In this document: positions 14,947-55,498 of the stretch, piece after piece
How positions within the stretch are numbered: position 1 is the first letter of the stretch
Layout: each line of letters starts with the position of its first letter
Assembly (NCBI GenBank): GCA_002269645.1
Contig: NIVC01000093.1
Location: forward strand, 186,001 to 250,000
Origin: Macrostomum lignano
Lineage: Eukaryota
Direction of reading: 5' to 3'
DNA: 64,000 bases
Notes under the pieces: generated by a model
What the model saw: the letters and a program-made list of their open reading frames with translations, nothing else
Database searches by the model: none
What the model was told of the DNA's origin: nothing
Made by a program: the position numbers and the translations under genes

Positions 14947-14994
14947 GTAAGCTCTATTTTAGTAGATTGAGCTCCTGATATTAAAGAAGGTGTC

Positions 14995-15345: not shown

Positions 15346-15413
15346 TCGATCTTACTCTTTAGTATTCATCCTGACACACAATCAAGCAATCAAATAAACT
15401 TCCTCCTACTCAG

Positions 15414-27986: not shown

Positions 27987-28186
27987 ATTAACAACCAACC
28001 AATTCTGCTGATCAGCTACCGGGTCTCGGATCGGACAGAGTCATATCACATTATCAATCGGAGATCGGCTGCCGCCACGTTTGATTTGCTGTTCAGCATT
28101 GCCTACAGCTCGACTGGCCTGCCTCTGACCGTGACTCCGAATCCGTTAGTTTGTCTCTATCGGTCTGTGAGATTCGACTACAGCAG
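27987..28186 (+). CDS. TENM: Teneurin exon: YD-shell segment
   Basis: INNQPILLISYRVSDRTESY...LLFSIAYSSTGLP, like teneurin VNG..LL...YD...TE....LL.I.YD..G.P; donor ag|gtgaga. Confidence 0.85.
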
Positions 28187-28429
28187 GTGAGACAATGGAG
28201 TCTCGCGTTGAGAGAATAAGGATAAGGGATGGAGAAAAATATCGAAGGAAAGAGATTTAATAAAAATAGAGAAGTAGGCAAGGATGGAGTGGATGGAGAG
28301 TGAGGAGACTCGAGAAACCTCAAAAGAGGAGTTGAGGGAATGTGGTGAGGAGGGAGAGAAGAGAAGAGAGGGGGGTTGGGAGGAGAGGGGAAGAGCAGAG
28401 GAGAAGCGAAGAGAGGGGGAGAAGTGAAA

Positions 28430-29290
28430 AGAAGGGAAGAGAGGGAAAGAGAAGGGGAGAGAGGGAGAGGGGAAAAGAGAAGGGGAGAGAGGGAGAGGGG
28501 AAAAGAGAAGGGGAGAGAGGGAGAGGGGAAAAGAGAAGGGGAGAGAGGGAGAGGGGAAAAGAGAAGGGGAGAGAGGGAGAGGGGAAAAGAGAAGGGGAGA
28601 GAGGGAGAGGGGAAAAGAGAAGGGGAAAGAGGGAGAGGGGAAAAGAGAAGGGGAGAGAGGGAGAGGGGAAAAGAGAAGGGGAGAGAGGGAGAGGGGAAAA
28701 GAGAAGGGGAGAGAGGGAGAGGGGAAAGAAGGGGAGAGAGGGAGAGGGGAAAAGAGAAGGGGAGAGAGGGAGAGGGGAAAAGAGAAGGGGAGAGAGGGAG
28801 AGGGGAAAAGAGAAGGGGAGAGAGGGAGAGGGGAAAGAAGGGGAGAGAGGGAGAGGGGAAAAGAGAAGGGGAGAGAGGGAGAGGGGAAAAGAGAAGGGGA
28901 GAGAGGGAGAGGGGAAAAGAGAAGGGGAGAGAGGGAGAGGGGAAAAGAGAAGGGGAGAGAGGGAGAGGGGAAAAGAGAAGGGGAGAGAGGGAGAGGGGAA
29001 AAGAGAAGGGGAGAGAGGGAGAGGGGAAAGAGAAGGGGAGAGAGGGAGAGGGGAAAGAAGGGGAGAGAGGGAGAGGGGAAAAGAGAAGGGGAGAGAGGGA
29101 GAGGGGAAAAGAGAAGGGGAGAGAGGGAGAGGGAAAAGAGAAGGGGAGAGAGGGAGAGGGAAAAGAGAAGGGGAGAGAGGGAGAGGGGAAAAGAGAAGGG
29201 GAGAGAGGGAGAGGGGAAAAGAGAAGGGGATAGAGGGAGAGGGGAAAAGAGAAGGGGAGAGGGGGAGAGGAGAAAAGAGAGGGAGGGGGG
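28430..29290. repeat. Intronic polypurine 28-bp minisatellite (AAAAGAGAAGGGGAGAGAGGGAGAGGGG)
   Basis: Period 28, almost purely A/G. Confidence 0.96.
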
Positions 29291-29558
29291 AGAGAGTGAT
29301 AGTGAGGAAGAGATTCAGAAGTAACGGAATGACATAAAAATTTTTGAAAGGCTGGAAATGAAGAGAACACTTTGCCATTGAGTACGGTAAAAATTCATAG
29401 ATTGAATACTAATATAGAATGATAAAAAAGTGTTTTAAATAAAATATGGAAGGCTGAGGGACATCAAATAATATTTTAACGCTTTATTTTCATTATTACG
29501 TTTTAAATATAAAAAACTTCAAACTATCACTCACTCTATTTATCAACCCTTCATTCAG

Positions 29559-29835
29559 CGACGGACAGCAACTGTCCGAGCTTGCTTGGTCCGACCGGCC
29601 TCGGACAGCGTCGGAGCAAACCGGACAGCGCGAGGCTCGACTTCTGTGGCGTTTCGACCAGCCTTCGTTGAGATCGAAAGCTTCACCGGGACGTCAGTTG
29701 GTGTTGGCGGCGCAGCAGCGCTACCCCAGGTCCGATGGCGGCGCCTCTGATGCTGAGGCTGGCGAAGAGGTTGCCGAGTATCGATTCGGCTATTCGGCTT
29801 CCGGCGGAAATGGCAACTGCACGGGGTCCAGCGCG
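29559..29835 (+). CDS. TENM: Teneurin exon: YD-shell segment (divergent)
   Basis: tcattcag acceptor (phase 2), gcg|gtgagt donor (phase 0), open frame DGQQLSELAWSD...EYRFGYS. Phase-compatible with both neighbours; sequence similarity is weak. Confidence 0.72.
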
Positions 29836-30059
29836 GTGAGTTGTCTGCTCATATTGTTGGCTATAGATCTAAAAAATGTCTCAGTGACTCTAGAACACGT
29901 AGATCATTGAACCAGTAAGATCGATAGACTAGATCTACTCTTGACCTCTACTCTTGACCTTCTAGGCTTGAAACTCTTTCACATCGAAGTCAAATGAGCC
30001 TTTAAAGCAACAAAAAGATGACTAGTTTCTTCATAGCAGACTCGCGATATGCAAATAAT

Positions 30060-30370
30060 AATAACTAATTTATTATTGATTACACCTGCCCTAATGGGCA
30101 GATGTGCAACCGACAGCTCAGCCGCAGCTATTGCGCGGTGCATCTGAAGGCTGCGTACGGCTGTTCAGTCCAACGGCTGTGGGAGGGGGGTCGCCACACA
30201 TACCCTCAATTACCCCAGCTAATGCTGGCACCCATTTTACAGCTGGGTGAACTGAAGCAATGCAGAGTTAAGTGTCTTGCTCAAGGACACGAATTGTCTC
30301 AGTGAGATCAGGAATCGAAACCCCGACCTTCAAGTCGTGAGTCCGAGGCTCTAACCACTAGACTACAACC
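30060..30370 (+). mobile_element. CORE-SINE / L2-type 3' fragment
   Basis: cccattttacagctgggtgaactgaagc (MIR/CORE-like), then aagtgtcttgctcaaggacac...ggaatcgaaacc..gacc...gtgagtccgaggctctaaccact, typical of L2-mobilised SINE tails. Confidence 0.55.
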
Positions 30371-31183
30371 CCCTATAGACCCGCATATATTAGCGAAAAT
30401 ATCCCCACGAAATTTTAAACAGGATTTTATTCCTAACCCCTACTTCTTTGGCGCGTGGCACCCCAATTCAGTTCTCTTAATAAGGAACCGCTTCTCCGCT
30501 TTTTTCCCATCGACTGTGTTTTGAGTTGATTGGGTTTTGAAACCAAATACGAATGTCAATAGTAGCAGGAAGACTTAGAAATGCTCGATTGGAGGACACA
30601 AGAGTGAGAAAATTCCCTTGGGCTGGAAGGGTTGGATTGAAATCGCAGGTGTTTGCCTTGGTCATCCAGCTCATTTAATTCGTCCCTCTTCTCTACGGGT
30701 TTTCCAACCGCACAGAGAAGTAAAAAATATTCCGGAGTGTTGGAGTTAATGCATACCTTCAAGCGTGAGGGAATTTAATTGCTTTCAGGGCCATATAGGA
30801 AGGAACTTTCATTTCTTGGCCTTGCTCACAGTCATTTCTAGCAGGTCGCCACGGCCAGGCAAGTGGGGCGGAGGCCGGTGAAAATGAAGTTTGTGGGCGA
30901 AAATCACTTCTGGATGAGGAGAGGGCGAGAGAGCAGCCGGACTGAAGGACTTTGCCAGAAATTAATTTCCTTCCAGCACGCCAGACTCCCGTCGCCAAGC
31001 GGGTTATTCCGCTTCCCTCTTCTCTTCTTCATTATATAATTTTGAGCAGTGCATCAAGACGTCAATCAGACGTCAAGGCAGGATGCAGTATGAGTAGTTG
31101 CTCTATATAGTTCAATAGACCGACTGGCATTCTTCAAATTCAAACAAAATTTAATGCCCCTCTTTGGTTGTCCTCAATTACAG

Positions 31184-32683
31184 CCGAGCACGATCGACAA
31201 TCCGCTTGGAGGTCGATTTCACTTCGCATGCGACTCCAGCGGAGGCTTGATGTCGCTCGGCACACCAGACGGCCGGCTGCATCGATTCCTAGCGAATTGG
31301 GGCCTGGCCACCAACCGTATTCTGTATTGGCCCTGCAAAGACTGCGTCAATCCGTTTGTATTCAACTACGAATCTGGGGATTACCTGCAGTCGTTGCACT
31401 ATCCCAGCCAGCTGCGTCGTTTGAGTTTTGCGCTAACAGCTGATAGAAGAGTGCGCCGAGTCGTTTCTGACCAAGCCTACACCGAGATAGCTTACAGTAG
31501 CGACAACAGCCGACTGCCCAGCGCGTTGCGTACGGTCTATTTTGACGAGACAAATACAAATGTCAGTCAGAGATACGATTATACTGGCGGCTTGCTGAGA
31601 AAACAAGTGATAACGTTCGACTGCGCGGGTGACGATCAACTGGCCAAAGCTAGTTACGTCTACCGCTACGATACCGAGCTGAGGATCGCGGGCATTGAGA
31701 CTGTCATCACCAGTAGGGATAGACAGCCGGTGACCTCTCTAGCGAATGTCACACGCGATCCGATTGGCGGCGGTGTCACTTTGTTGAACGACCTCAGCAT
31801 GGAGAGACGTGTCTCTCATCATGAACACTCGGTGAGACTGCGGGACTCTCACTGCACTCGACGCTTTCAGTTTGACAGTCTGGCCAGGCTGACGGAGAGC
31901 ACGCTGCACTGCGGCTCGGACAGCCGGCGCGCTTTCGTACTCTCGGTGCACGGGCACAGTCGGGGCCGCCTCCAAGAGCAAGTATACCGCATCGGAGAGT
32001 CTGACGGCTTGTCCGTAGCCTATCAGACCAATAAGCTTGGTCTAGTTGTTCGCGCCACCGCAGCTTCAGTCGCTGTAGCCGGCTCTCCAGTAAGAACCAC
32101 CGCGGACGAAGCGCTGGAGTACACGCTCGGCGGTCGAATCCACTGGCGATCGATTCGCAGCAGCTCTGTTGGAGCTCTTGAGAGGTTGAACTACACCTAC
32201 GACAGTCGCACTGGCCTGCCGAAAAGCGTCGGATCTGTCCAATACTCATTTGACGCGGATGGTTTTCTAGCGATGCGTCGACACCGCCTAAGCGCTGGAA
32301 GTGTAGAGAATTTTCGTTACGACGCCAAAGGTTTGGTACGTCGCGCCGAGGCTATTGACTCAAGCGGCCGTCGTCTTTACAGTCTGAGGTACGTTTATGA
32401 CGCCCAGGAGCGCCTACTAGCCAGAATAGATCGACTTCATCCGCAAAAAAGCACGCAGTTTCTTTACGCCGACCCCGAATACCCTCGACGCGTGACGCAC
32501 ATTCTGCCCGGCGCTGGTCGGTTTGAGCAGTCGGTGCTCACTTGCCGCTACGAGGATCGCACCGGTCAGCTAGTTGCCGTGGAAACTGGGGAGCCGCAGA
32601 AAATCGAAAGGTTCTACGTCGTTAGCGACTATTTCAGTTCCCCATTGGCTTTGCTTAATCAACAAGGCGAACTAGAGACACAG
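31184..32683 (+). CDS. TENM: Teneurin exon: YD/Rhs repeats
   Basis: 1500-bp exon in ORF 31154-32797 with many YD dipeptides (QRYDY, YRYDTE, YTYDS, FRYDAKG, YVYDAQER) and YVVSDYFSSPLALLN; ends cag|gtaagc. Confidence 0.95.
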
Positions 32684-32774
32684 GTAAGCAGGGCTAATCT
32701 AGACCAGCTTTTTATTTTAATAAATTTTACGAACCAATATATTATACCTAAACAAACTAAATCGATTATTTTAG

Positions 32775-33953
32775 CTAAGCTACAGTGCCACAGGTGAGCG
32801 CTCAGTAATTTCAAAACGGCCAACCGCTCCTTCGCTACCGTTCGGCTATCGATTGGGCCTGCAAGATCCCGACGCTGGTCTGGTATGGCTTAGTGGCAGT
32901 CGCACCTATGATCCTTACCTTGGCCAGTGGACTGGTCCCGATCCATTGGGCCTGTTCACCAGACTTTCAGCTGCACTTCAGACGCCTGAGTCGATTGACG
33001 GCTACATTTTTGACCACTTGTCAACGACTGAAAACGGTCCTTTGGTGTCCAACTATGAGGAAGTTAGTCGACCGGAATATTGGCTTAAGGCCTTCAACAT
33101 CGACGCAAAGCGACTGTTAAGAGCCACCAACATCGTTTCTATGGGTATAGGCCGTGAAGCTGAAGAAGGTCTGTTGCCAAGGCTGCACCAGAGTCCGCTA
33201 TCACCGAAATCAGTATCCGTTGAGTCCATTTTTGAAGCTGGTTTTCGTCGTCGCCTCGACAGTTTCCAGCGCATCATTGGAGCGTTTGACTTTGTGCAAC
33301 CTTCTTCGGCACCGGTAGCTCCACCTTTGGCATCGGCTCCGGCGTTCATCTACCCGGGATTGCGTCCGACATTTTCAGTCGACGGTAAAATATCCCTGAC
33401 CGGTTGGGAGGACAACTCGTTGGCCTTGCCCGATCGGGTTCGTCAACTGGCCGCATTGGTTTTCAACGGGTCTCGACTGCTGCCTCAGCAAGCCGAAACC
33501 ATAGCCAACGGTCATCGTTGGTTGCGGCTCTATCGCGAGGCTACGCCAGCCACAGAGTCGGCCGTTCGAGATCTCGAACAGTCTATTGCGCCAGCTGGTG
33601 CTGCATCAATCAGCATTAAACGCGATGGCGACGACAGCTGTCTCGAGGTTCGCGTCGACTCCGGCCTGCTGTCAGCTTCTCTTCGCTGCAGCCGTTCGTC
33701 ATTCGAGACCGAGGCGAATCAGCTAGCGACTACCGGACTGCGAATGGTTGCCACGCGATTGATGCGAGCAGAGGCTGCTTCGATCACCGCTGACGGCTAC
33801 GCAGCGACTCGGTTCGACTGGAGCAGGGTGGCCCAGCAGGAGCTACGTCAGAACGGCATCGCAGCCGGTTATCGACCAGCTAATGCTGGAAAAAACCACG
33901 ACCAACTGCTCTGGGACGATCCAGGCAGCGTGTACTTTGTACCGACTGCGTAG
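32775..33953 (+). CDS. TENM: Teneurin last exon: Rhs-core motif, ABD and Tox-GHH-like C-terminus
   Basis: ttttag|LSYSATGE...FGYRLGLQDPDAGLVWLSGSRTYDPYLGQWTGPDPLG...WSRVAQQELRQNG..AGY...DDPGSVYF, stop TAG at 33951-33953. The 13 exons join into one frame of about 2,310 codons. Confidence 0.95.
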   Translation, partial: LSYSATGERSVISKRPTAPSLPFGYRLGLQDPDAGLVWLSGSRTYDPYLGQWTGPDPLGLFTRLSAALQTPESIDGYIFDHLSTTENGPLVSNYEEVSRPEYWLKAFNIDAKRLLRATNIVSMGIGREAEEGLLPRLHQSPLSPKSVSVESIFEAGFRRRLDSFQRIIGAFDFVQPSSAPVAPPLASAPAFIYPGLRPTFSVDGKISLTGWEDNSLALPDRVRQLAALVFNGSRLLPQQAETIANGHRWLRLYREATPATESAVRDLEQSIAPAGAASISIKRDGDDSCLEVRVDSGLLSASLRCSRSSFETEANQLATTGLRMVATRLMRAEAASITADGYAATRFDWSRVAQQELRQNGIAAGYRPANAGKNHDQLLWDDPGSVYFVPTA

Positions 33954-37354: not shown

Positions 37355-38068
37355 ATGGCTGCGCTAATGAACGCTCTTCTGTGGCTTGTGTCTTCAATTT
37401 ACTTTGTCAGCGTGGTGACCGCCGTAAGCAGCAGCTGCGAGTCCAGATGCCCCGTCTACGTCAGAGCGCCGCCACCAGTCTGTGGCGACGGCAAGGAGTA
37501 CATGGACGAGTGTCGGGCCAAGTGCGCCGGAGCCAATGTCATAACCAAAGGCCCCTGTCCGACTATTAATCCGGCTTGTACCTGCTTGGCAGTCTACGAC
37601 CCGGTGTGCGGCGACGGCAAGGACTACGGCAACGAGTGCTTGGCTCGGTGCGCCGGCGCCAAAAAGATCGTCAAAGGAGCGTGCCCGACGAAAGCACCAC
37701 CGTGCATCTGTCCGCTTTACTACAAGCCAGTGTGCGGCGATGGCAAGACCTATTCAAACATATGCTTCGCCCGCTGTGCCGGAGCCAAGCGCATTTCTGA
37801 TGGGCCGTGCAAGTGCCCGTGTCCCAGGATCTACAAGCCTGTGTGCGGCAGCGACGGTGTCACCTATGCCAACAGGTGCTTGGCTCGCTGTTCTGGTGTC
37901 AAGCGAGCTACTCGAGGCCCCTGCTGCCCACCTTGCGCTGTTCGTTGCGCTGACATCTACGACCCAGTGTGCGCTGACGGAGTGACCTACAGGAATCGCT
38001 GCTCGACCATCTGTCTATGCCCGCAGCCCAAGTCCATTGTACCGGGAGAGTGCAGAAAGGGTCGCTAA
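37355..38068 (+). CDS. Secreted multi-Kazal serine protease inhibitor, 5 domains (Kazal gene 1), intronless
   Basis: Hydrophobic N-terminal signal; repeated C-x-C-P-x-I/Y-Y-x-P-V-C-G-(S)-D-G-x-x-Y-x-N-x-C-x-A-R-C-x-G, the non-classical LDTI-like Kazal pattern. Confidence 0.93.
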
Positions 38069-38709: not shown

Positions 38710-41700
38710 ATGCTTTTTCTTGCACTTCCTCTCGCCGTAATTTTTCCTTGCTTAATCGCCACTGCAAACACTGGCTCAATGTGCAAGTCAAACTGCCCAG
38801 TTTACGTTCGGGCCCCTGATACTGTTTGCGGCGCTGACGGCAAACAGTACTACGACAAGTGTAGAGCAATGTGCGCAGGAGTCAAGGTGATACCATGCCC
38901 AAAAAAGCCACCGTGTATTTGTATAAAGATTTACAAGCCGGTGTGCGTTAAGGGAAAGAAAGAGTACGCTAACGCGTGCTTAGCTCGATGCGATGGTGCC
39001 AGAGCTAAGCATATCGTTGACGGTCCTTGTTCAAGACGACCGCCGTGCATCTGTGCCAATATATACAGCCCCGTGTGCGTTAAGGGAAAAGAGTACGGTA
39101 ACGCTTGCTTGGCTCGATGCGACGGTGCAAATCCGAACGACGTATATAAGGGACCGTGCTCGAATCCAAGGTCTTGCGTTTGCACTAAGATCTACCGACC
39201 CGTATGTGTCAAGGGCAAGAAGGAGTATGCCAACGCTTGTTTAGCTCGATGCGATGGTGCCAAAAGTAAATATATCGTCAACGGTCGTTGCAAGAAGCGA
39301 CCGCCTACCTGCGTTTGTACTAAGATCTACCGACCCGTATGTGTCAAAGGCAAGAAGGAGTATGCCAACGCTTGTTTAGCTCGATGCGATGGTGCCAAAA
39401 GTAAATATATCGTCAACGGTCGTTGCAAGAAGCGACCGCCTACCTGCGTTTGTACTAAGATCTACCGACCCGTATGTGTCAAGGGCAAGAAGGAGTATGC
39501 CAACGCTTGTTTAGCTCGATGCGATGGTGCCAAAAGTAAATATATCGTCAACGGTCGTTGCAAGAAGCGACCGCCTACCTGCGTTTGTACTAAGATCTAC
39601 CGACCCGTATGTGTCAAGGGCAAGAAGGAGTATGCCAACGCTTGTTTAGCTCGATGCGATGGTGCCAAAAGTAAATATATCGTCAACGGTCGTTGCAAGA
39701 GGCGACCGCCTACCTGCGTTTGCACTAAGATCTACCGACCCGTATGTGTCAAGGGCAAGAAGGAGTATGCCAACGCTTGTTTAGCTCGATGCGATGGTGC
39801 CAAAAGTAAATATATCGTCAACGGTCGTTGCAAGAAGCGACCGCCTACCTGCGTTTGTACTAAGATCTACCGACCCGTATGTGTCAAAGGCAAGAAGGAG
39901 TATGCCAACGCTTGTTTAGCTCGATGCGATGGTGCCAAAAGTAAATATATCGTCAACGGTCGTTGCAAGAAGCGACCGCCTACCTGCGTTTGTACTAAGA
40001 TCTACCGACCCGTATGTGTCAAAGGCAAGAAGGAGTATGCCAACGCTTGTTTAGCTCGATGCGATGGTGCCAAAAGTAAATATATCGTCAACGGTCGTTG
40101 CAAGAAGCGACCGCCTACCTGCGTTTGCACTAAGATCTACCGACCCGTATGTGTCAAAGGCAAGAAGGAGTATGCCAACGCTTGTTTCGCTCGATGCGAT
40201 GGTGCCAAAAGTAAATATATCGTCAACGGTCGTTGCAAGAAGCGACCGCCTACCTGCGTTTGTACTAAGATCTACCGACCCGTATGTGTCAAAGGCAAGA
40301 AGGAGTATGCCAACGCTTGTTTAGCTCGATGCGATGGTGCCAAAAGTAAATATATCGTCAACGGTCGTTGCAAGAAGCGACCGCCTACCTGCGTTTGTAC
40401 TAAGATCTACCGACCCGTATGTGTCAAAGGCAAGAAGGAGTATGCCAACGCTTGTTTAGCTCGATGCGATGGTGCCAAAAGTAAATATATCGTCAACGGT
40501 CGTTGCAAGAAGCGACCGCCTACCTGCGTTTGTACTAAGATCTACCGACCCGTATGTGTCAAAGGCAAGAAGGAGTATGCCAACGCTTGTTTAGCTCGAT
40601 GCGATGGTGCCAAAAGTAAATATATCGTCAACGGTCGTTGCAAGAAGCGACCGCCTACCTGCGTTTGTACTAAGATCTACCGACCCGTATGTGTCAAAGG
40701 CAAGAAGGAGTATGCCAACGCTTGTTTAGCTCGATGCGATGGTGCCAAAAGTAAATATATCGTCAACGGTCGTTGCAAGAAGCGACCGCCTACCTGCGTT
40801 TGTACTAAGATCTACCGACCCGTATGTGTCAAAGGCAAGAAGGAGTATGCCAACGCTTGTTTAGCTCGATGCGATGGTGCCAAAAGTAAATATATCGTCA
40901 ACGGTCGTTGCAAGAGGCGACCGCCTACCTGCGTTTGCACTAAGATCTACCGACCCGTATGTGTCAAGGGCAAGAAGGAGTATGCCAACGCTTGTTTAGC
41001 TCGATGCGATGGTGCCAAAAGTAAATATATCGTCAACGGTCGTTGCAAGAAGCGACCGCCTACCTGCGTTTGTACTAAGATCTACCGACCCGTATGTGTC
41101 AAGGGCAAGAAGGAGTATGCCAACGCTTGTTTAGCTCGATGCGATGGTGCCAAAAGTAAATATATCGTCAACGGTCGTTGCAAGAGGCGACCGCCTACCT
41201 GCGTTTGCACTAAGATCTACCGACCCGTATGTGTCAAGGGCAAGAAGGAGTATGCCAACGCTTGTTTAGCTCGATGCGATGGTGCCAAAAGTAAATATAT
41301 CGTCAACGGTCGTTGCAAGAAGCGACCGCCTACCTGCGTTTGTACTAAGATCTACCGACCCGTATGTGTCAAAGGCAAGAAGAATATGCCAACGCTTGTT
41401 TAGCTCGATGCGATGGTGCCAAAAGTAAATATATCGTCAACGGTCGTTGCAAGAAGCGACCGCCTACCTGCGTTTGTACTAAGATCTACCGACCCGTATG
41501 TGTCAAAGGCAAGAAGGAGTATGCCAACGCTTGTTTAGCTCGATGCGATGGTGCCAAAAGTAAATATATCGTCAACGGTCGTTGCAAGAAGCGACCGCCT
41601 ACCTGCGTTTGCACTAAGATCTACCGACCCGTATGTGTCAAAGGCAAGAAGGAGTATGCCAACGCTTGTTTCGCTCGATGCGATGGTGCCAAAAGTAAAT

Positions 41701-44261
41701 ATATCGTCAACGGTCGTTGCAAGAAGCGACCGCCTACCTGCGTTTGTACTAAGATCTACCGACCCGTATGTGTCAAAGGCAAGAAGGAGTATGCCAACGC
41801 TTGTTTAGCTCGATGCGATGGTGCCAAAAGTAAATATATCGTCAACGGTCGTTGCAAGAAGCGACCGCCTACCTGCGTTTGTACTAAGATCTACCGACCC
41901 GTATGTGTCAAAGGCAAGAAGGAGTATGCCAACGCTTGTTTAGCTCGATGCGATGGTGCCAAAAGTAAATATATCGTCAACGGTCGTTGCAAGAAGCGAC
42001 CGCCTACCTGCGTTTGTACTAAGATCTACCGACCCGTATGTGTCAAAGGCAAGAAGGAGTATGCCAACGCTTGTTTAGCTCGATGCGATGGTGCCAAAAG
42101 TAAATATATCGTCAACGGTCGTTGCAAGAAGCGACCGCCTACCTGCGTTTGTACTAAGATCTACCGACCCGTATGTGTCAAAGGCAAGAAGGAGTATGCC
42201 AACGCTTGTTTAGCTCGATGCGATGGTGCCAAAAGTAAATATATCGTCAACGGTCGTTGCAAGAAGCGACCGCCTACCTGCGTTTGTACTAAGATCTACC
42301 GACCCGTATGTGTCAAAGGCAAGAAGGAGTATGCCAACGCTTGTTTAGCTCGATGCGATGGTGCCAAAAGTAAATATATCGTCAACGGTCGTTGCAAGAA
42401 GCGACCGCCTACCTGCGTTTGTACTAAGATCTACCGACCCGTATGTGTCAAGGGCAAGAAGGAGTATGCCAACGCTTGTTTAGCTTGATGCGATGGTGCC
42501 AAAAGTAAATATATCGTCAACGGTCGTTGCAAGAAGCGACCGCCTACCTGCGTTTGCACTAAGATCTACCGACCCGTATGTGTCAAGGGCAAGAAGGAGT
42601 ATGCCAACGCTTGTTTAGCTCGATGCGATGGTGCCAAAAGTAAATATATCGTCAACGGTCGTTGCAAGAAGCGACCGCCTACCTGCGTTTGCACTAAGAT
42701 CTACCGACCCGTATGTGTCAAGGGCAAGAAGGAGTATGCCAACGCTTGTTTAGCTCGATGCGATGGTGCCAAAAGTAAATATATCGTCAACGGTCGTTGC
42801 AAGAAGCGACCGCCTACCTGCGTTTGTACTAAGATCTACCGACCCGTATGTGTCAAAGGCAAGAAGGAGTATGCCAACGCTTGTTTCGCTCGATGCGATG
42901 GTGCCAAAAGTAAATATATCGTCAACGGTCGTTGCAAGAAGCGACCGCCTACCTGCGTTTGTACTAAGATCTACCGACCCGTATGTGTCAAAGGCAAGAA
43001 GGAGTATGCCAACGCTTGTTTCGCTCGATGCGATGGTGCCAAAAGTAAATATATCGTCAACGGTCGTTGCAAGAAGCGACCGCCTACCTGCGTTTGTACT
43101 AAGATCTACCGACCCGTATGTGTCAAGGGCAAGAAGGAGTATGCCAACGCTTGTTTAGCTCGATGCGATGGTGCCAAAAGTAAATATATCGTCAACGGTC
43201 GTTGCAAGAAGCGACCGCCTACCTGCGTTTGTACTAAGATCTACCGACCCGTATGTGTCAAGGGCAAGAAGGAGTATGCCAACGCTTGTTTAGCTCGATG
43301 CGATGGTGCCAAAAGTAAATATATCGTCAACGGTCGTTGCAAGAAGCGACCGCCTACCTGCGTTTGTACTAAGATCTACCGACCCGTATGTGTCAAAGGC
43401 AAGAAGGAGTATGCCAACGCTTGTTTCGCTCGATGCGATGGTGCCAAAAGTAAATATATCGTCAACGGTCGTTGCAAGAAGCGACCGCCTACCTGCGTTT
43501 GTACTAAGATCTACCGACCCGTATGTGTCAAAGGCAAGAAGGAGTATGCCAACGCTTGTTTAGCTCGATGCGATGGTGCCAAAAGTAAATATATCGTCAA
43601 CGGTCGTTGCAAGAAGCGACCGCCTACCTGCGTTTGTACTAAGATCTACCGACCCGTATGTGTCAAAGGCAAGAAGGAGTATGCCAACGCTTGTTTCGCT
43701 CGATGCGATGGTGCCAAAAGTAAATATATCGTCAACGGTCGTTGCAAGAAGCGACCGCCTACCTGCGTTTGTACTAAGATCTACCGACCCGTATGTGTCA
43801 AGGGCAAGAAGGAGTATGCCAACGCTTGTTTCGCTCGATGCGATGGTGCTAATCCTAGGGATGTTGTCAAGGGACCCTGCTCGAAGAAACCACCGTGCAT
43901 CTGCCCGCTAATATACAAGCTAGTGTGTGGCGACAAAAAAACTTATTCTAACGCGTGCTTTGCCCGATGCGCTGGAGCCAAGCGCATTACTAATGGTCCC
44001 TGCTTATGTGCGTGTCCGAGAATCTACAGGCCAGTGTGTGGCAGTGACACTAAGACCTACGGCAATCTGTGTCTGGCTCGATGTGCTGGAATCAAGGAAG
44101 TCACTGAGGGGCCCTGCTGCAGGCCGTGCGCTGTCAGATGCGCCAACATATATAAGCCAGTATGCGCTGATGGAGTGACCTACAGGAATCGCTGCATGAC
44201 CGTCTGTCTGTGCCCGCAGCCGAAGTCTATCGTGCCTGGAGAGTGTCGAAAAGATTGCTAG
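38710..44261 (+). CDS. Giant secreted multi-Kazal protein, about 41 domains (Kazal gene 2); as assembled has a -1 frameshift near 41383 and a CGA>TGA stop at 42486-42488
   Basis: Signal peptide, 3 unique Kazal domains, 35 x 135-bp units (CVCTKIYRPVCVKGKKEYANACLARCDGAKSKYIVNGRCKKRPPT), then 3 unique domains ending [18 protein letters not shown]. ORFs 41364-42488 and 43923-44261 are in the same frame. Confidence 0.88.
39175..43848 (+). repeat. Coding tandem array: 35 copies of a 135-bp Kazal unit
   Basis: Unit starts at 39175, 39310 ... 43764 (34x135 minus the 1-bp deletion). Apart from the two lesions, copies differ only at about 4 sites (tgt/tgc, aaa/aag, L/F, K/R). Confidence 0.97.
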
Positions 44262-45027: not shown

Positions 45028-45864
45028 TTAATGAATTTCTGATTCAAGCTTGGCCTTGCACTCTCCCGGCACGATCGACTTTGGCCGCGGACACAGGCAG
45101 GTAGTCGAACAGCGATTCCTGTAGGTCATTCCATCAGCGCAGACTGGATCGTAGATGTTCGCGCATTTGACGGTGCACATTGGACAGCAGGCACCGCGGG
45201 TAACTCGCTTGACACCAGAGCAGCGAGCCAGGCACTTATTCGGATAGGTGACATTGTCACTGCCGCACACTGGCATGTAGGATCTGTGACAGCGACACTT
45301 ACATTGTCCGTTAGTAATGCGCTTAGCTCCTGCACATCGAGCAAAGCATTTATTCGAATACTTCTTGCCGTCGCCGCACACAGGCTTGTAGAAACTACGA
45401 CAGCGACACTTACATTGTCCGTTAGTAATGCGCTTAGCTCCTGCACATCGAGCAAAGCATTTGTTCGAATACTTCTTGCCGTCGCCGCACACAGGCTTGT
45501 AGACCAGCGGGCAGAAGCACTGGGGCTTTCTGTCTGGACAGCGACCGTCTTCGATCTTTTTGGCTCTCATGCAGCGAGCAAGGCACTTGTTATTGTAGTT
45601 TTTACCGTCCCCGCACACTGGAGCGTAGATTTCTGGACAGCCGTCAGAGCATGACTTTTTTTTCGGACATCGGCCCTTGGTAATAGCCTTGGCTCCGGCG
45701 CACTTGGCCCGACACTCGTCCATGTATAGTTTGCCGTCCCCGCATACAATTGGCGGCGTTGCAAAGTAGACCGGGCAGCGATAGTTGCAGCCTTGCTCGA
45801 TTGAAACTGCGCCAAAGTACAATGAAGAGAATACTAACATTATAATGGTCTGTAGCACAGCCAT
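45028..45864 (-). CDS. Secreted multi-Kazal inhibitor, 6 domains (Kazal gene 3), intronless
   Basis: Signal peptide MAVLQTIIMLVFSSLYFGA; six Kazal motifs including a near-perfect internal duplication ([32 protein letters not shown] twice); ends [14 protein letters not shown]. Confidence 0.93.
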   Translation of the reverse strand: MAVLQTIIMLVFSSLYFGAVSIEQGCNYRCPVYFATPPIVCGDGKLYMDECRAKCAGAKAITKGRCPKKKSCSDGCPEIYAPVCGDGKNYNNKCLARCMRAKKIEDGRCPDRKPQCFCPLVYKPVCGDGKKYSNKCFARCAGAKRITNGQCKCRCRSFYKPVCGDGKKYSNKCFARCAGAKRITNGQCKCRCHRSYMPVCGSDNVTYPNKCLARCSGVKRVTRGACCPMCTVKCANIYDPVCADGMTYRNRCSTTCLCPRPKSIVPGECKAKLESEIH

Positions 45865-48900: not shown

Positions 48901-50415
48901 ATGATTCGACTCGTCCCAGTTCTGCTGGGCCTGCTGTTCATCTTCCAGAGCTCCGAGGCTCAAACAAAGCCTTCGTGCGAGTCAAGCTGTCCAGTGTACG
49001 TTCGAGCTCCCGACCCCGTATGCGGGGCCGACGGAAGAAAGTACTACGACGAGTGCCACGCCAAGTGCGCTGGCGTTGAGGTTGTCCCTTGTCCGACGAC
49101 AACGACTAGGCCAACGCATATTCCGCCGCCCAAAACGACTAGGCCAACGCGTATTCCGCCGCCCAAGACGACTAGGCCAACGCGTATTCCGCCGCCCAAG
49201 ACGACTAGGCCAACGCGTATTCCACCGCCTAAGCCAACGACTAGGCCAACGCGTATTCCACCGCCCAAGACGACTAGGCCAACGCGTATTCCACCGCCCA
49301 AGACGACTAGGCCAACGCATATTCCGCCGCCCAAAACGGCTAGGCCAACGCGTATTCCGCCGCCCAAAACGACTAGGCCAACGCGTATTCCACCGCCCAA
49401 GACGACTAGGCCAACGCATATTCCGCCGCCCAAAACGGCTAGGCCAACGCGTATTCCGCCGCCCAAAACGACTATGCCAACGCATATTCCACCGCCTAAG
49501 CGAACGACTAGGCCAACGCGTATTCCACCGCCCAAGACGACTAGGCCAACGCGTATTCCACCGCCCAAGACGACTAGGCCAACGCGTATTCCACCGCCTA
49601 AGCCAACGACTAGACCAACGCGTATGCCAAAGCTTACACCGACAACTACACGAAGGTCATCGTGCGAGTCGAGCTGTCCCGTCTACGTTCGAGCTCCCGA
49701 CCCCGTCTGCGGCTCCGATGGCAAAAAGTACTACGACGAATGTCGCGCCAAGTGCGCTGGCATCAAGGTCGTTTCTTGTCCGACTCCGGAACCCTGCATT
49801 TGCACGATGATCTACAAGCCTGTGTGTGGAGACGGCAAGGACTACGGCAACGAGTGCATGGCTCGTTGCGACGGGGCCGTAGATATTGTCGACGGCCACT
49901 GCCCGACTAAGAAACCGCCCTGCATATGCACGAAGATCTACAAGCCTGTGTGCGGAGACGGCAAAGACTACGGCAACGAGTGCATGGCTCGTTGCGACGG
50001 GGCCGTAGATATTGTCGACGGTCCGTGCCCGACAAAGAAGCCGCCGTGTCTCTGCCCACTAATTTACAAGCCTGTGTGCGGAGACGGCAAAGACTACGGA
50101 AACGAGTGCATGGCCCGCTGTGCAGGAGCCGAGGAAATCGTTGATGGGCCATGTCTGTGCTCCTGTCCGAGGTACTATCTGCCTGTCTGCGGAAGCGATG
50201 GTGTCACTTACAGCAACATGTGCTTCGCTAGGTGCGCCGGAGTCACCTGCACATCGCGCGGGCCCTGCTGTCCGAAGCGGTGCCCAGTCTGTGCCGACGT
50301 CTATAAACCGGTGTGCGTTAATGGCGAGAAAACGTACAAAAACAGATGCATGACCCTCTGCCTTTGCCCGAAGCCGAAGTCAGTCGTACCTGGAGAGTGT
50401 CCGAGAAAAGGATGA
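48901..50415 (+). CDS. Secreted multi-Kazal protein, 7 domains with a Pro/Thr/Arg-rich stalk (Kazal gene 4), intronless
   Basis: Signal peptide, Kazal domain, 15 x TTRPT(R/H)IPPPK repeats, a second copy of the N-terminal-type Kazal, then five more domains. Confidence 0.93.
   Translation: MIRLVPVLLGLLFIFQSSEAQTKPSCESSCPVYVRAPDPVCGADGRKYYDECHAKCAGVEVVPCPTTTTRPTHIPPPKTTRPTRIPPPKTTRPTRIPPPKTTRPTRIPPPKPTTRPTRIPPPKTTRPTRIPPPKTTRPTHIPPPKTARPTRIPPPKTTRPTRIPPPKTTRPTHIPPPKTARPTRIPPPKTTMPTHIPPPKRTTRPTRIPPPKTTRPTRIPPPKTTRPTRIPPPKPTTRPTRMPKLTPTTTRRSSCESSCPVYVRAPDPVCGSDGKKYYDECRAKCAGIKVVSCPTPEPCICTMIYKPVCGDGKDYGNECMARCDGAVDIVDGHCPTKKPPCICTKIYKPVCGDGKDYGNECMARCDGAVDIVDGPCPTKKPPCLCPLIYKPVCGDGKDYGNECMARCAGAEEIVDGPCLCSCPRYYLPVCGSDGVTYSNMCFARCAGVTCTSRGPCCPKRCPVCADVYKPVCVNGEKTYKNRCMTLCLCPKPKSVVPGECPRKG
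49100..49625 (+). repeat. Coding 33/36-bp tandem repeat (TTRPTRIPPPK x15) in Kazal gene 4
   Basis: Seen directly. Confidence 0.95.
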
Positions 50416-52102: not shown

Positions 52103-52921
52103 ATGTCGATTCCAGCCTCCATCTCTATGCTTCTTGTTCTAACTGGCACCTGCTTGAATCTGCCTGACGCTGCCGCTGCGCCAACAAGCTGCGAGTCCAG
52201 CTGCCCGGTCTACGTCAGAGAGCCAACACCAGTCTGTGGCGACGGCAAGGAGTACATGGACGAGTGTCGGGCCAAGTGCGCCGGAGCCAAGGTCATCACC
52301 AAAGGCCCCTGTCCGACTATTAATCCGGCTTGTACCTGCTTGGCAATCTACGAGCCGGTGTGCGGAGACGGCAAGGACTACGGCAACGAGTGCTTGGCTC
52401 GGTGCACCGGCGCCAAGGTCATCTCAAAAGGCCCCTGTCCGACTCCGAAGCCGTGTGTCTGTCCGGAAATTTACCAGCCGGTTTGCGGCGACGGCAAGGA
52501 CTACAGCAACGAATGCTTGGCTCGGTGCGCCGGCGCCAAGGTCATCTCGTCTGGCATCTGTCCGACTGAGTCACCTGGCTGCATCTGCCCCATGATCTAC
52601 GACCCTGTCTGCGGCTCTGACGGTCGCACCTATTCAAATGGTTGCGCAGCCTCTTGCGCCGGTGTTAAAGTGGTCTCCAAGGGCCGTTGTGAGTGTCGGA
52701 ACTGTCCGAAAATCTACAAGCCAGTGTGCGGCAGCGATGGCGAGACCTACCAGAACGCTTGCCAGGCCAAGTGCTCCGGCGTGAAGAAAATCTCTCAGGG
52801 CACCTGCGGCTGCGTTTGCCCGCTAGTCTACGCGCCAGTGTGCGCCGATGGCAAGACCTACGACAACGAGTGCGAGGCCAACTGCGCCGGAGTGAAGAAT
52901 GCCAACCCGGGCGAGTGCTAA
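52103..52921 (+). CDS. Secreted multi-Kazal inhibitor, 6 domains (Kazal gene 5), intronless
   Basis: ATG at 52103, signal peptide [18 protein letters not shown], six Kazal motifs, stop TAA. Confidence 0.93.
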
Positions 52922-53832: not shown

Positions 53833-54927
53833 TTATGGATGACAGCAGGGCCCGTGCGATGTACAGGTGACTCCGGCGCACCTAGCGAAGCACATATTGC
53901 TGTAGGTGACACCATCGCTTCCGCAGACCGGGAGATAGTCCCTCGGACAGGAGCACAGACATGGCGGCCCATCAACGATTTCCTCGGCTCCTGCACAGCA
54001 GGCCAAGCACTCGTTTCCGTAGTCTTTGCCGTCTCCGCACACAGGCTTGTAAATTAGTGGGCAAAGACACGGAGGCTTCTCGGTTGGGCAAGGACCGTCG
54101 ACAATATCTACGGCCCCGTCGCAACGAGCCATGCACTCGTTGCCGTAATCCTTGCCGTCTCCGCACACAGGCTTGTAGATCTTCGTGCAGATGCAGGGCG
54201 GTTTCTTTGTCGGGCAAGGACCGTCGACAATATCTACGGCCCCGTCGCAACGAGCCATGCACTCGTTGCCGTAGTCCTTGCCGTCTCCGCACACAGGCTT
54301 GTAGATCTTCGTGCAGATGCAGGGCGGTTTCTTTGTCGGGCAAGGACCGTCGACAATATCTACGGCCCCGTCGCAACGAGCCATGCACTCGTTGCCGTAG
54401 TCCTTGCCGTCTCCGCACACAGGCTTGTAGATCTTCGTGCAGATGCAGGGCGGTTTCTTTGTCCGACAGGGGCCATCGACAATATCTACGGCCCCGTCGC
54501 AATGAGCCATGCACTCGTTGCCGTAGTCCTTGCCGTCTCCGCACACAGGCTTGTAGATCTTCGTGCAGATGCAGGGCGGTTTCTTTGTCCGACAGGGGCC
54601 ATCGACAATATCTACGGCCCCGTCGCAATGAGCCATGCACTCGTTGCCGTAGTCCTTGCCGTCTCCGCACACAGGCTTGTAGATTTCCGGACAGACGCAC
54701 GGCGTCTTCTTCGTTGGCCTCGTCGTTGTCGTCGGACAAGGGACAACCTCAACGCCAGCGCACTTGGCGTGGCACTCGTCGTAGTACTTTCTTCCGTCGG
54801 CCCCGCATACGGGATCAGGAGCTCGAACGTACACTGGACAGCTTGACTCGCACGAAGGCTTTGTTTGAGCCTCGGAGCTCTGGCAGATGAACAAAAGACC
54901 CAGCAGAACTGGGACGAGTCGAATCAT
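53833..54927 (-). CDS. Secreted multi-Kazal inhibitor, 8 intact domains, last domain frameshifted (Kazal gene 6; inverted paralogue of gene 4)
   Basis: [37 protein letters not shown] is nearly identical to gene 4. Has 126-bp internal repeats. The rest of the ninth domain (KPVCVNGEKTYKNRC...PGECLRKG*) lies out of frame down to 53724. Confidence 0.9.
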   Translation of the reverse strand: MIRLVPVLLGLLFICQSSEAQTKPSCESSCPVYVRAPDPVCGADGRKYYDECHAKCAGVEVVPCPTTTTRPTKKTPCVCPEIYKPVCGDGKDYGNECMAHCDGAVDIVDGPCRTKKPPCICTKIYKPVCGDGKDYGNECMAHCDGAVDIVDGPCRTKKPPCICTKIYKPVCGDGKDYGNECMARCDGAVDIVDGPCPTKKPPCICTKIYKPVCGDGKDYGNECMARCDGAVDIVDGPCPTKKPPCICTKIYKPVCGDGKDYGNECMARCDGAVDIVDGPCPTEKPPCLCPLIYKPVCGDGKDYGNECLACCAGAEEIVDGPPCLCSCPRDYLPVCGSDGVTYSNMCFARCAGVTCTSHGPCCHP

Positions 54928-55498
54928 TGGCATTCGAAAAATAATTGTCACGAGTTTAGTCTTGGCAATTTTTTTCCGCGTCCCGATGTCTTATTTTTTA
55001 CCCTATTGTCAGTCACGTATATATAGTTTTCAATGCGGGTAAACATGTTTTGGTAAAATTTTGGAATGTTTTCTTGTCACCCGTTTGGCGTTGTTTTGGT
55101 AGACAGTTAAAATTACAAGCGGAGCTAGGGTTCGGCCTGCCGTGCTTGCTTTTCGGACATGGGACCGAAGTCGCAAAACAATAGCTTGAAACATGCAGCT
55201 TCTTGCAAGTAAAATTCTTGTTTTTTTCGGTTATGCATAACAGAATCCATTGTTCTGTTTGAGGCTGTACTTAGATAACCCGAAAGTTAGATAAGGTAGA
55301 GTTTGGGGTTAGGGTCTACGACTAGTTATCTTTGAAGCTGAGTTTATGTTCGTGCCTTCATTTCGACTAAAAATAGAATCTTAACGAAGGATTGAGAAGC
55401 AAGTGACTGCATATTAAAAAGCAGTGCAAAACAATACAGCGAGTCACATCTAAAACTCAACTATCCTTCTCAAACTGTTCCACCTGTTGGATTGCAAT

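What the first reader, a model, noticed from the sequence alone, without database searches (positions are those of the whole stretch)
38710..44261. Giant (about 1,850 aa, about 41-domain) secreted Kazal polymer with 35 nearly identical, strongly cationic, Tyr/Lys-rich units
Seen: a signal peptide, then 35 copies of a 45-aa unit with 6 Cys, 8 Lys, 4 Arg, 3 Tyr and only 2 acidic residues (net about +10 per unit). The canonical Kazal GSDG turn is replaced by VKGKK. Known: the C-x-C...C-x3-C spacing is the non-classical leech LDTI/bdellin type, and P1=Lys (C-T-K-I) predicts trypsin-like specificity. Familiar multi-Kazal proteins are shorter (LEKTI has 15 domains) and usually have diverged domains. 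Inference: 35 identical binding loops on a polycationic chain suggest a structural, adhesive, mucus/eggshell or antimicrobial polymer with built-in protease resistance, not a simple inhibitor. Mussel foot protein 2 (tandem Cys-rich EGF modules, Lys- and DOPA-rich) is a conceptual analogue.
Basis: partly seen in the sequence, partly recalled or inferred. Interest (0 to 1): 0.82.

Follow-up and report, generated by a model that had tools for sequence, protein, structure and literature searches.

The report
Amplified cationic Kazal inhibitor gene, frame broken
A flatworm (Macrostomum lignano) gene for a secreted protease inhibitor has very recently amplified one small, strongly positively charged trypsin-inhibitor module 35 times, which would make a record 41-module protein, but in this assembly a frameshift and a stop codon cut it to 897 residues.

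Summary
The repeat is real: 35 copies of a 135-bp/45-aa unit (99% identical) at 39175-43895, behind a signal-peptide-like leader. It is a non-classical Kazal domain: Pfam Kazal_1, nearest solved structure the leech tryptase inhibitor LDTI, reactive site C-T-K|I.

The claimed 1,850-aa reading frame is not continuous. Unit 17 is 134 bp, so the frame shifts and stops at 41401-41403. Unit 25 carries CGA>TGA at 42486. As assembled, the ORF is 897 aa.

The window is Macrostomum lignano Mlig_3_7 (NIVC01000093.1:186001-250000). This is a PacBio-CLR/Canu/Pilon assembly, so the two lesions may be consensus errors or real. The gene sits in a cluster of six intronless secreted multi-Kazal paralogues, and one of them is also truncated.

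My best reading is a very recently amplified polyvalent inhibitor of trypsin-like proteases, whose non-contact surface was recharged from 0 to +10 so that it sticks to anionic matrices. I found no support for a DOPA/adhesive role. No expression evidence could be obtained.

One uncharacterised protein elsewhere has 22 Kazal domains, 19 of them identical, so the polymer idea is not unique. This is a new variant of a known kind, of moderate interest.

The parts
38710..38778 (+). Start codon and signal-peptide-like hydrophobic leader (MLFLALPLAVIFPCLIATANTGS)
   Evidence: ORF start. 12-aa GRAVY is 2.78, and all five paralogues have comparable leaders directly before the first Kazal domain. No signal-peptide predictor was available, so the cleavage site is inferred.
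38779..39174 (+). Three diverged N-terminal Kazal domains: d1 (CKSNCPVYV...), d2 (38914-39045, net +7, VKGKK type) and d3 (39046-39174, net +2)
   Evidence: Pfam Kazal_1/Kazal_2 hits, domain alignment, charges.
39175..41334 (+). Units 1-16 of the 135-bp/45-aa cationic Kazal repeat, intact and in frame with the ATG
   Evidence: The only variants are two synonymous changes (unit positions 9 and 39) and two conservative changes (L>F at 69, K>R at 122).
41335..41468 (+). Unit 17, 134 bp. GGAGT>GAAT at about 41382-41384 shifts the frame, and a premature stop at 41401-41403 ends the 897-aa ORF.
41469..42413 (+). Units 18-24, intact Kazal units but in the shifted frame. They are untranslated unless the unit-17 lesion is an assembly error.
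   Evidence: Units 15-23 repeat the variant pattern of units 4-12 (block duplication at an offset of 11 units).
42414..42548 (+). Unit 25, with the in-frame nonsense change CGA>TGA at 42486-42488
42549..43895 (+). Units 26-34, plus unit 35 (43764-43895), whose 3' half is diverged (…DGANPRDVVKGPCSKKPP, net +7)
43896..44261 (+). Three conserved C-terminal Kazal-like domains shared with paralogues G1, G3 and G4, then the stop codon at 44259-44261
   Evidence: Pfam. dN/dS against G1 and G3 is 0.15-0.20 with dS>1, so this part was translated and constrained for most of its history.
37355..38068 (+). Paralogue G1, 237-aa secreted multi-Kazal gene, 640 bp upstream of the array gene
45028..45864 (-). 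Paralogue G3, 278 aa, convergent with the array gene. It has cationic domains of +7 to +9.
48901..50415 (+). Paralogue G4, 504 aa, with a mucin-like PT-rich 33-bp array and charge-neutral [17 protein letters not shown]... units
52103..52921 (+). Paralogue G5, 272 aa. This is the only cluster member with a called gene on record, and it identified the contig.
53833..54951 (-). Paralogue G6, with 5.4 copies of a 126-bp neutral P1-Lys unit. Its last domain is disrupted by a deletion of about 26 bp.

Best explanation
[quoted passage not shown] It is one of six clustered genes for secreted multi-domain Kazal-type serine-protease inhibitors.

Origin. One LDTI-like domain of this gene was amplified to 35 near-identical copies by recent unequal crossing-over. 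This included a duplication of a block of at least 9 units.

Each unit looks like a working inhibitor (inferred).
- The canonical substrate-like binding loop is intact: C-T-K|I-Y-R-P-V-C, with P1 Lys and P1' Ile as in LDTI.
- The scaffold Tyr and Asn are present.
- Each unit should therefore act as a tight-binding standard-mechanism inhibitor of trypsin-like proteases.

The surface was recharged.
- Away from the loop, the net charge went from 0 in the sister unit of paralogues G4/G6 to +10.
- This gives about +0.2 charge per residue along a flexible beads-on-a-string chain.
- Such a polycation should bind anionic matrices such as mucus or glycocalyx glycans, egg or sperm surfaces, or microbial envelopes. 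It would hold a very high local density of inhibitor sites there (inferred).

What this sequence actually encodes. A frameshift in unit 17 and a nonsense codon in unit 25 limit the product to 897 aa (3 + 16 whole domains, net +179). The full 41-domain protein exists only if both lesions are consensus errors of the CLR assembly.
For: Array and composition.

Kazal identity:
- Pfam.
- PDB sequence search puts LDTI first at E=1.1e-6, with unit K5-I6 aligned to K8-I9.
- The AF2 unit model has pLDDT 79.7, and Foldseek ranks the three LDTI entries first (prob 1.00, TM up to 0.76).

Scaffold and P1 variation:
- The six Cys are conserved (five invariant; the first is C4, in at least 90% of domains), and Y10, Y21 and N23 are invariant across all 24 family domains.
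- P1 varies among the domains (K, R, L, M, A, E, N), as expected of active inhibitors.

Directional charge change: 10 replacements raise the charge and 1 lowers it against the G4/G6 unit (sign test p=0.006).

Chain geometry: in the three-unit model the domains have pLDDT 75-88, the linkers are below 50, and pTM is 0.33.

Secretion: hydrophobic leaders in all six genes.

Past constraint on the part beyond the lesions: dN/dS 0.15-0.20 against G1 and G3.

Species and contig:
- The neighbouring teneurin is 97% identical to an M. lignano UniRef entry.
- G5 is on record in GCA_002269645.1 contig NIVC01000093.1.
- 4819 of 4819 bases are identical between that record and the window.
- The accession NIVC is Mlig_3_7 (PMC5730564).

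Recency: units differ at 0.9-1.7 positions per 135 bp, with the minimum at an offset of 11 units.
Against: - The frame is broken twice. The only two singleton changes in the 4.7-kb array are both disabling, which fits either a dying gene or an imperfect consensus.
- A sister gene (G6) is also truncated, by a deletion of about 26 bp, so real decay does occur in this cluster.
- There is no expression evidence. The gene has no entry in the protein collections. No Kazal gene is mentioned in the Macrostomum papers or supplements I searched. Its tryptic peptides are absent from the footprint and tail proteomics supplements of PMC6410801.
- With units this similar, selection on the array itself cannot be measured.
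- The target protease and the anionic partner are unknown.
- Full occupancy of adjacent 45-aa units by 24-kDa proteases is sterically doubtful (inference).
Confidence: 0.5

Rival explanations
1. Young pseudogene or neutral runaway minisatellite. The gene has lost, or is losing, its function. The 135-bp array expanded because this genome is prone to tandem-repeat expansion, and it stays 'in frame' only because the unit is a whole number of codons.
For: - A frameshift and a nonsense codon are present, and they are the only singleton changes in the array. Only 6.4% of random substitutions would give a stop.
- The window holds more than 20 other tandem arrays, and 15% of the genome is simple or tandem repeats (PMC5730564).
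- Paralogue G6 carries a real truncating deletion.
- G2's post-array domains replace otherwise conserved residues, for example YKLVC for YKPVC and GDKK for GDGK.
- No gene is on record for this locus.
Against: - The C-terminal domains beyond the lesions show dN/dS of 0.15-0.20, so any loss of function is recent.
- The upstream 897-aa ORF, with leader and 19 whole domains, is intact and could still be a working protein.
- The lesions lie in a place where Pilon polishing of a CLR consensus is unreliable.
- The other arrays in the window have short periods and are non-coding.
Confidence: 0.25
2. Polyprotein precursor. The chain is cut in the flexible tribasic linkers (…C-K-K-R-P-P-T-C…) to release about 35 copies of one 45-aa cationic inhibitor or antimicrobial peptide. 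Repetition would then serve dosage, as in LEKTI, Pot-II inhibitor precursors and nematode polyprotein antigens (comparisons from my own knowledge).
For: - The units are identical and each is followed by KKR or KRR.
- The linkers are predicted to be disordered (pLDDT below 50).
- The single unit has the size and charge of LDTI (46 aa, net +5).
Against: - There is no R-x-K/R-R furin consensus, because position P4 is the disulfide-bonded Cys.
- Pro follows the Arg, which disfavours convertase and trypsin cleavage (established enzymology, not tested here).
- The paralogues have similar P-T-K-K-P-P linkers without amplification.
Confidence: 0.15
3. Structural, adhesive or egg-coat polymer. Lys and Tyr/DOPA chemistry and charge give cohesion or surface binding, and the Kazal fold serves mainly as a protease-resistant brick.
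For: - Charge density is extreme (+179 over 897 aa).
- M. lignano adhesion relies on Lys/Arg-rich regions of Mlig-ap1 binding anionic glycans (PMC6410801).
- Kazal domains are among the commonest domains in limpet adhesive mucus proteins, and a 10-Kazal protein is up-regulated in an anemone pedal disc (PMC7333891 and PMC6626399).
Against: - Tyr is 6.7%, and two of the three Tyr are invariant Kazal core residues.
- The reactive loop is kept in optimal inhibitor form.
- The gene is not among the reported adhesive or prostate transcripts, and its peptides are absent from the footprint supplements.
- There is no similarity in domain make-up to Mlig-ap1 or Mlig-ap2 as described.
Confidence: 0.15
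4. The copy number is an assembly artefact: a shorter array was over-expanded by Canu.
For: - The assembly comes from PacBio CLR reads only, with short-read polishing.
- A block of at least 9 units is repeated with an identical variant pattern. This could be either a real duplication or a mis-join.
Against: - The units carry a non-periodic mosaic of four shared variants, not a simple reiteration.
- The array is only 4.7 kb, which is within single CLR read length (my own knowledge of the technology).
- An intact array of 19.8 copies of a 165-bp Kazal unit exists in a contig with hifiasm-style naming from another organism, so such arrays do occur.
Confidence: 0.1

Closest known systems
Leech-derived tryptase inhibitor (LDTI; PDB 1AN1, 1LDT, 2KMO), a non-classical single-domain Kazal inhibitor
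   Same: - Same Cys framework: C-x-C-x7-C-x10-C-x3-C.
- Same reactive site, K|I.
- About 45% identity over 32-40 residues.
- Best sequence and fold match.
- Also cationic, at +5.
   Different: - LDTI is a single 46-residue domain, whereas here one domain is repeated 35 times within a 41-domain gene.
- GSDGRTY is replaced by VKGKKEY.
- The net charge is doubled.
Multi-domain Kazal inhibitors: LEKTI/SPINK5 (15 domains), ovoinhibitor and ovomucoid, and insect dipetalogastin, infestin and rhodniin (from my own knowledge)
   Same: Secreted chains of tandem Kazal domains, each with its own reactive site. LEKTI is processed in its linkers.
   Different: - Their domains are diverged and have different P1 residues, whereas here 35 units are 99% identical.
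- This gene has no furin consensus in its linkers.
- It would have far more domains, but only if the frame is really intact.
P0020, an uncharacterised 1233-aa ORF on ENA ERZ19610909 contig ptg000545l
   Same: - A polymer of near-identical non-classical Kazal units: 165 bp x 19.8 copies at 99% identity, 22 domains with 19 identical.
- It is the top hit of the unit in 1.84 billion representatives.
   Different: - Its units carry an 18-residue Pro/Ala/Gln-rich spacer.
- Its net charge is about 0.
- Its P1 is Met (C-A-M-T).
- The organism is unknown.
- Its reading frame is intact.
Paralogues G4 and G6 in the same window
   Same: The same unit ancestry (CICTKIYKPVC…ARCDGA…, P1 Lys) and the same mode of growth by whole-domain tandem duplication, 126 bp x 2.6 and x 5.4.
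   Different: Their units are charge-neutral, have only 3-6 copies, and are older (89-95% identity).
Mussel foot protein 2 and the Mlig-ap1 KR-regions (adhesive polycations)
   Same: Secreted, Cys-rich and/or strongly cationic repetitive proteins. Mlig-ap1 comes from the same species and binds anionic sugars.
   Different: - There is no EGF domain, no KR low-complexity region, and no high Tyr or DOPA content.
- The resemblance rests on charge only, and no homology was found.

Membership tests
Kazal-type serine protease inhibitor domain (Pfam PF00050/PF07648; MEROPS I1) | Profile match above the curated threshold | tested here: met
   - A single 45-aa unit scores 25.3 bits against Kazal_1 (cutoff 21, E=1.6e-5).
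- The 897-aa ORF scores 194 bits over 16 stretches.
- The N- and C-terminal parts also match.
Kazal-type serine protease inhibitor domain | Six Cys in Kazal spacing (C3-x10-C4-x2/3-C5), plus the conserved Tyr-x-Asn-x-Cys scaffold | tested here: met
   - The unit has C-x-C-x7-C-x10-C-x3-C-x12-C.
- The Cys are conserved across the 24 domains of the cluster (five invariant; the first, C4, in at least 90%), and Y21 and N23 are invariant.
- Disulfide connectivity itself was not determined.
Kazal-type serine protease inhibitor domain | Kazal fold (short three-stranded sheet plus one helix) | tested here: met
   - The AF2 model has pLDDT 79.7 with the element order E-E-H-E.
- Nearly all of the top 40 Foldseek hits are Kazal domains.
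- LDTI is first, with prob 1.00 and TM 0.63-0.76. E-values are weak (0.04) because the domain is so small.
Kazal-type serine protease inhibitor domain | Canonical reactive-site loop after the second Cys, and actual inhibition of a serine protease | not testable with these tools
   The loop C-T-K-I-Y-R-P-V-C aligns without gaps to LDTI C-P-K-I-L-K-P-V-C and to ovomucoid residues 15-36. Inhibition needs an enzyme assay.
Non-classical (LDTI / bdellin / rhodniin-type) Kazal subgroup | Only 1-2 residues between the first and second Cys, and a short N-terminal segment | tested here: met
   C-V-C in every unit. The best PDB matches are all non-classical members: LDTI, CrSPI-1, AaTI and infestin.
Processed multi-Kazal precursors (LEKTI-like) | Furin-type R-x-K/R-R sites in the inter-domain linkers | tested here: not met
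   The linker is C-K-K-R-P-P-T-C, so P4 is Cys and P1' is Pro. The linkers are predicted to be flexible, so cleavage by another protease cannot be excluded.
DOPA/Tyr-Lys adhesive or eggshell proteins (mfp-like, flatworm eggshell precursors) | High Tyr content (10% or more) available for DOPA formation | tested here: not met
   There are 3 Tyr in 45 residues (6.7%). Two of them are invariant core residues of every Kazal domain in the cluster. DOPA itself cannot be tested here.
Intact protein-coding gene of about 1,850 aa | One uninterrupted reading frame from 38710 to 44261 | tested here: not met
   The length is 5552 bp, there is a frameshift at about 41382 and a TGA at 42486. Whether these lesions are real needs read-level data.

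The most novel reading that the evidence does not exclude
The two lesions are consensus errors, and M. lignano makes a roughly 200-kDa, 41-domain, about +370-charged 'inhibitor polyelectrolyte'. This would be a secreted chain that coats anionic mucus, glycocalyx, egg or adhesive material. There it would work both as a cohesive or antimicrobial polycation and as a dense, immobilised array of trypsin-inhibitor sites. That combination of a charge-driven matrix protein with a polyvalent Kazal inhibitor has not been described.
Probability: 0.2. Interest if true: 0.7.

Novelty: new variant of a known kind. Interest (0 to 1): 0.45.

Why it matters
If the full chain is made, it would have the most Kazal domains seen in this search: 41, against at most 22 among the 150 best hits in 1.84 billion representatives. 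It would also be the most cationic, at +0.20 per residue against at most +0.12.

It would be a clean natural example of two things. The first is whole-domain amplification caught within about 1% divergence. The second is surface recharging of an inhibitor scaffold without touching its binding loop.

M. lignano offers RNAi, in situ hybridisation and transgenesis, and its adhesion is known to be charge-driven. The role of a polycationic inhibitor in mucus, adhesion, egg protection or immunity is therefore directly testable there.

If the lesions are real, the locus instead documents birth-and-death turnover in a rapidly evolving, still unannotated inhibitor cluster. It also shows how tandem arrays in CLR assemblies can mislead ORF reading.

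Tried and rejected
- Homologue search with the 897-aa ORF gave only 7 hits, at 34% identity or less, and none from this species.
- Exact look-ups of G1, the 897-aa G2 ORF, G3 and G4 found nothing on record. Only G5 was found, and it is the only called gene within 20 kb.
- A first attempt to identify the species from the teneurin NHL exon returned only distant hits. A longer concatenated teneurin query succeeded.
- Rfam found nothing in the window.
- Literature:
  - No paper links Macrostomum with Kazal genes.
  - Searches on planarian Kazal and on large multi-Kazal proteins returned nothing relevant.
  - The seminal-fluid candidate table has no Kazal or inhibitor entry.
  - The positional RNA-seq, adhesion and genome-paper supplements have none either.
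  - The unit's tryptic peptides (EYANACLAR, YIVNGR, IYRPVCVK) are absent from the adhesion paper's supplements.
- Upstream regions of the six paralogues do not align, apart from G4 with G6, so no shared promoter motif could be defined.
- Poly(A)-signal scanning was uninformative.
- An intron that skips both lesions was considered and rejected as unsupported. All paralogues are single-exon, and any splice signal would recur in every identical unit.
- Programmed frameshifting was considered and rejected, because it would not bypass the later nonsense codon.
- A selection test on the array itself is impossible, because there are only six variable positions.

Full report
**1. What is in the sequence**

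Tandem Repeats Finder reports one array at 39175-43849 with a 135-bp period, 34.6 copies, 99% matches, no indels and score 9112. Anchoring on the unit start gives 35 units.

The consensus unit translates to CVCTKIYRPVCVKGKKEYANACLARCDGAKSKYIVNGRCKKRPPT. It has 6 Cys, 8 Lys, 4 Arg, 3 Tyr, 1 Asp and 1 Glu, net +10 and pI 9.7.

The ATG at 38710 opens a hydrophobic leader (12-aa GRAVY 2.78). Three diverged Kazal domains follow, then the array. After the array come three further Kazal-like domains and a stop at 44259-44261. The total is 41 domains.

**2. The reading frame is not continuous**

The interval 38710-44261 is 5552 bp, which is not a multiple of three.

- Unit 17 (41335-41468) is 134 bp. 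GGAGT has become GAAT at about 41382-41384. The frame that starts at the ATG then stops at 41401-41403, giving an 897-aa ORF.
- In the shifted frame, unit 25 carries CGA>TGA at 42486-42488.
- Only after that is the Kazal frame open to 44261.

The sequence as given therefore encodes a leader, 3 + 16 whole domains and a truncated 17th unit. That is about 99 kDa with net charge +179, not 1,850 aa.

These two lesions are the only singleton changes in the whole 4.7-kb array. The other variable positions are two synonymous and two conservative changes shared among several units. Only 6.4% of random substitutions in the unit would create a stop.

**3. Where the window comes from**

- The teneurin exons at 15331-19891 are 97% identical to a UniRef protein of Macrostomum lignano.
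- Paralogue G5 is on record in GCA_002269645.1, contig NIVC01000093.1.
- The fetched locus matches the window at 4819 of 4819 bases. This places the window at 186001-250000 of that contig.
- NIVC01 is the Mlig_3_7 assembly. It was built from PacBio CLR reads with Canu 1.4, then polished with Pilon using Illumina and RNA-seq reads. Simple and tandem repeats make up 15% of the genome (PMC5730564).

Short-read polishing is unreliable inside 35 near-identical 135-bp units. This is my inference from how short reads map to repeats. The two lesions may therefore be consensus errors.

Real decay also occurs in this cluster. Paralogue G6 lacks about 26 bp in its last domain compared with G4 and is truncated. 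I cannot decide between the two readings without the reads.

**4. What the unit is**

- A single unit passes the Pfam Kazal_1 threshold (25.3 bits against 21), and the 897-aa ORF scores 194 bits over 16 stretches.
- The closest solved structure by sequence is the leech-derived tryptase inhibitor (E=1.1e-6). The alignment is ungapped, CVCTKIYRPVC against CACPKILKPVC.
- This puts unit K5-I6 on LDTI K8-I9, which I know to be its reactive-site bond.
- The same search aligns unit residues 2-23 to ovomucoid third-domain residues 15-36. K5 therefore falls on residue 18, the classical P1 position (my knowledge of that numbering).
- An AlphaFold model of the unit has pLDDT 79.7. Its best fold matches are the three LDTI entries (prob 1.00, TM 0.63-0.76), followed almost only by other Kazal inhibitors.
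- In an alignment of all 24 distinct Kazal domains of the cluster, the Cys framework is conserved (five of the six Cys invariant; the first in at least 90% of domains) and the scaffold residues Y10, Y21 and N23 are invariant.
- P1 varies across those domains (K, R, L, M, A, E, N). This is the pattern expected of working inhibitors.

**5. Context: a gene family that grows by domain duplication**

Six single-exon genes with hydrophobic leaders and multiple Kazal domains lie between 37.3 and 55 kb. Synonymous divergence between them is saturated (dS>1), and dN/dS is 0.1-0.4.

Several paralogues contain their own whole-domain tandem arrays of different ages:

| Gene | Period | Copies | Identity |
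|---|---|---|---|
| G3 | 111 bp | 2.2 | 94% |
| G5 | 123 bp | 2.2 | 84% |
| G4 | 126 bp | 2.6 | 89% |
| G6 | 126 bp | 5.4 | 95% |

The 35-copy array is the extreme and youngest case of a recurrent process. Within it, mismatches between units are fewest at an offset of 11 units. Units 15-23 reproduce the variant pattern of units 4-12 apart from the frameshift lesion. This indicates a block duplication that predates the lesion.

The three C-terminal domains lie beyond both lesions. They show dN/dS of 0.15-0.20 against G1 and G3, so they were translated and constrained for most of the gene's history. Any loss of function is recent.

**6. The charge is a derived feature**

- The sister unit in G4 and G6 ([42 protein letters not shown]) has the same loop and net charge 0.
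- Of 20 differences between the two units, 10 raise the charge and 1 lowers it (sign test p=0.006).
- The changes lie outside the binding loop. GDG-KD has become VKGKKE, AVD has become AKSKY, and the linker has changed.
- Domains in the cluster range from -3 to +10, and G3 has domains of +7 to +9.
The 897-aa ORF has +0.20.

'Tyr-rich' is not a special feature. Two of the three Tyr are the invariant Kazal core residues.

**7. Chain geometry**

A three-unit AlphaFold model gives three separately folded domains (pLDDT 75-88). The R-P-P linker segments are below 50 and pTM is 0.33. This is a flexible beads-on-a-string chain with exposed tribasic linkers.

**8. Most likely mechanism**

What is shown: a secreted-type leader, canonical Kazal domains, a P1 Lys loop, extreme derived positive charge, flexible linkers and very recent amplification.

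What I infer:

- Each unit is a standard-mechanism inhibitor of trypsin-like proteases.
- The polycationic chain binds anionic matrices and concentrates inhibitor sites there.
- This would protect a secretion or surface from proteolysis, with a possible antimicrobial side effect.

Kazal domains are common in invertebrate adhesive mucus proteins (PMC7333891 and PMC6626399). M. lignano adhesion itself uses Lys/Arg-rich regions binding anionic sugars (PMC6410801). An association with mucus or adhesive material is therefore plausible.

I found no direct link, however. No Kazal entry appears in the prostate, positional or adhesion data sets searched, and the unit's tryptic peptides are absent from the adhesion paper's supplements.

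The rivals are a young pseudogene or neutral minisatellite, a polyprotein precursor, a structural or adhesive polymer, and array over-expansion. They are set out with their tests in the rival section.

**9. Comparison with what is known**

- At the domain level, the unit is a clear member of the non-classical Kazal family.
- At the protein level, it resembles multi-Kazal inhibitors such as LEKTI. It differs in unit identity and unit number, and it lacks furin sites.
- A search of 1.84 billion representative proteins with the unit gave 1235 hits. The largest number of matched stretches among the best 150 was 22.
- That top hit, P0020, is itself a polymer of near-identical Kazal units: 165 bp x 19.8 copies at 99% identity, an intact 1233-aa ORF on ENA ERZ19610909 contig ptg000545l.
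- Identical-unit Kazal polymers therefore exist elsewhere. P0020 is uncharacterised, has net charge about 0, and carries P1 Met.
- No close relative of the M. lignano cluster is present in the protein collections. Only G5 has a called gene on record, so the cluster is essentially unannotated.

**10. Verdict**

The domain-level interpretation is right. The 'structural, not inhibitor' inference is unsupported but not excluded.

The locus is a new variant of a known kind: an extreme, very recent, cationic amplification within a multi-Kazal inhibitor gene. It is of moderate interest, pending read-level confirmation and expression data.

Noticed in passing
window 48901-50415 (+), array at 49101-49629: Paralogue G4 carries a mucin-like Pro/Thr-rich 33-bp x 15.8 array (TTRPTRIPPPK) between its first Kazal domain and the remaining Kazal domains. 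This suggests a glycosylated spacer in a sister inhibitor.
   Followed up: partly
window 53833-54951 (-): Paralogue G6 has 5.4 copies of a 126-bp charge-neutral P1-Lys unit (95% identical). A deletion of about 26 bp in its last domain, relative to G4, shifts the frame and truncates it.
   Followed up: yes
window 15331-33953 (+): Exons of a teneurin-like gene (FN-plug, NHL, YD-shell and a C-terminal region). They are 97% identical to M. lignano UniRef A0A1I8GZX1 and include an intron of about 11 kb that holds tandem arrays.
   Followed up: partly
window 1-15305 and 21809-29294: Very dense non-coding tandem arrays with strong strand skew. Examples are 10 bp x 285 at 9981-12801, 41 bp x 66 at 22728-25435, and 28 bp x 31 at 28433-29294.
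   Followed up: no
window 60478-62648 (+): Three near-identical ORFs (about 106 aa, '...VTVTKSNVTCLDVDWPASNTSGVTYQLTCGS...', which look like FN3 domains to me but were not scanned) recur every 892 bp. This looks like a recent tandem duplication of an exon plus its intron.
   Followed up: no
window 42103-62921 (locus L002): Only G5 has a called gene on record for this stretch of NIVC01000093.1. G3, G4, G6 and the neighbouring gene at 58.7-62.6 kb (the repeated ORFs noted above) are not on record, so the Kazal cluster appears largely unannotated.
   Followed up: partly
L003 3001-6702 (ENA ERZ19610909, ptg000545l): An intact 1233-aa ORF from an unknown organism, made of a 165-bp x 19.8 array of near-identical Kazal-plus-linker units (P1 Met). 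This is an independent example of a Kazal polymer.
   Followed up: partly
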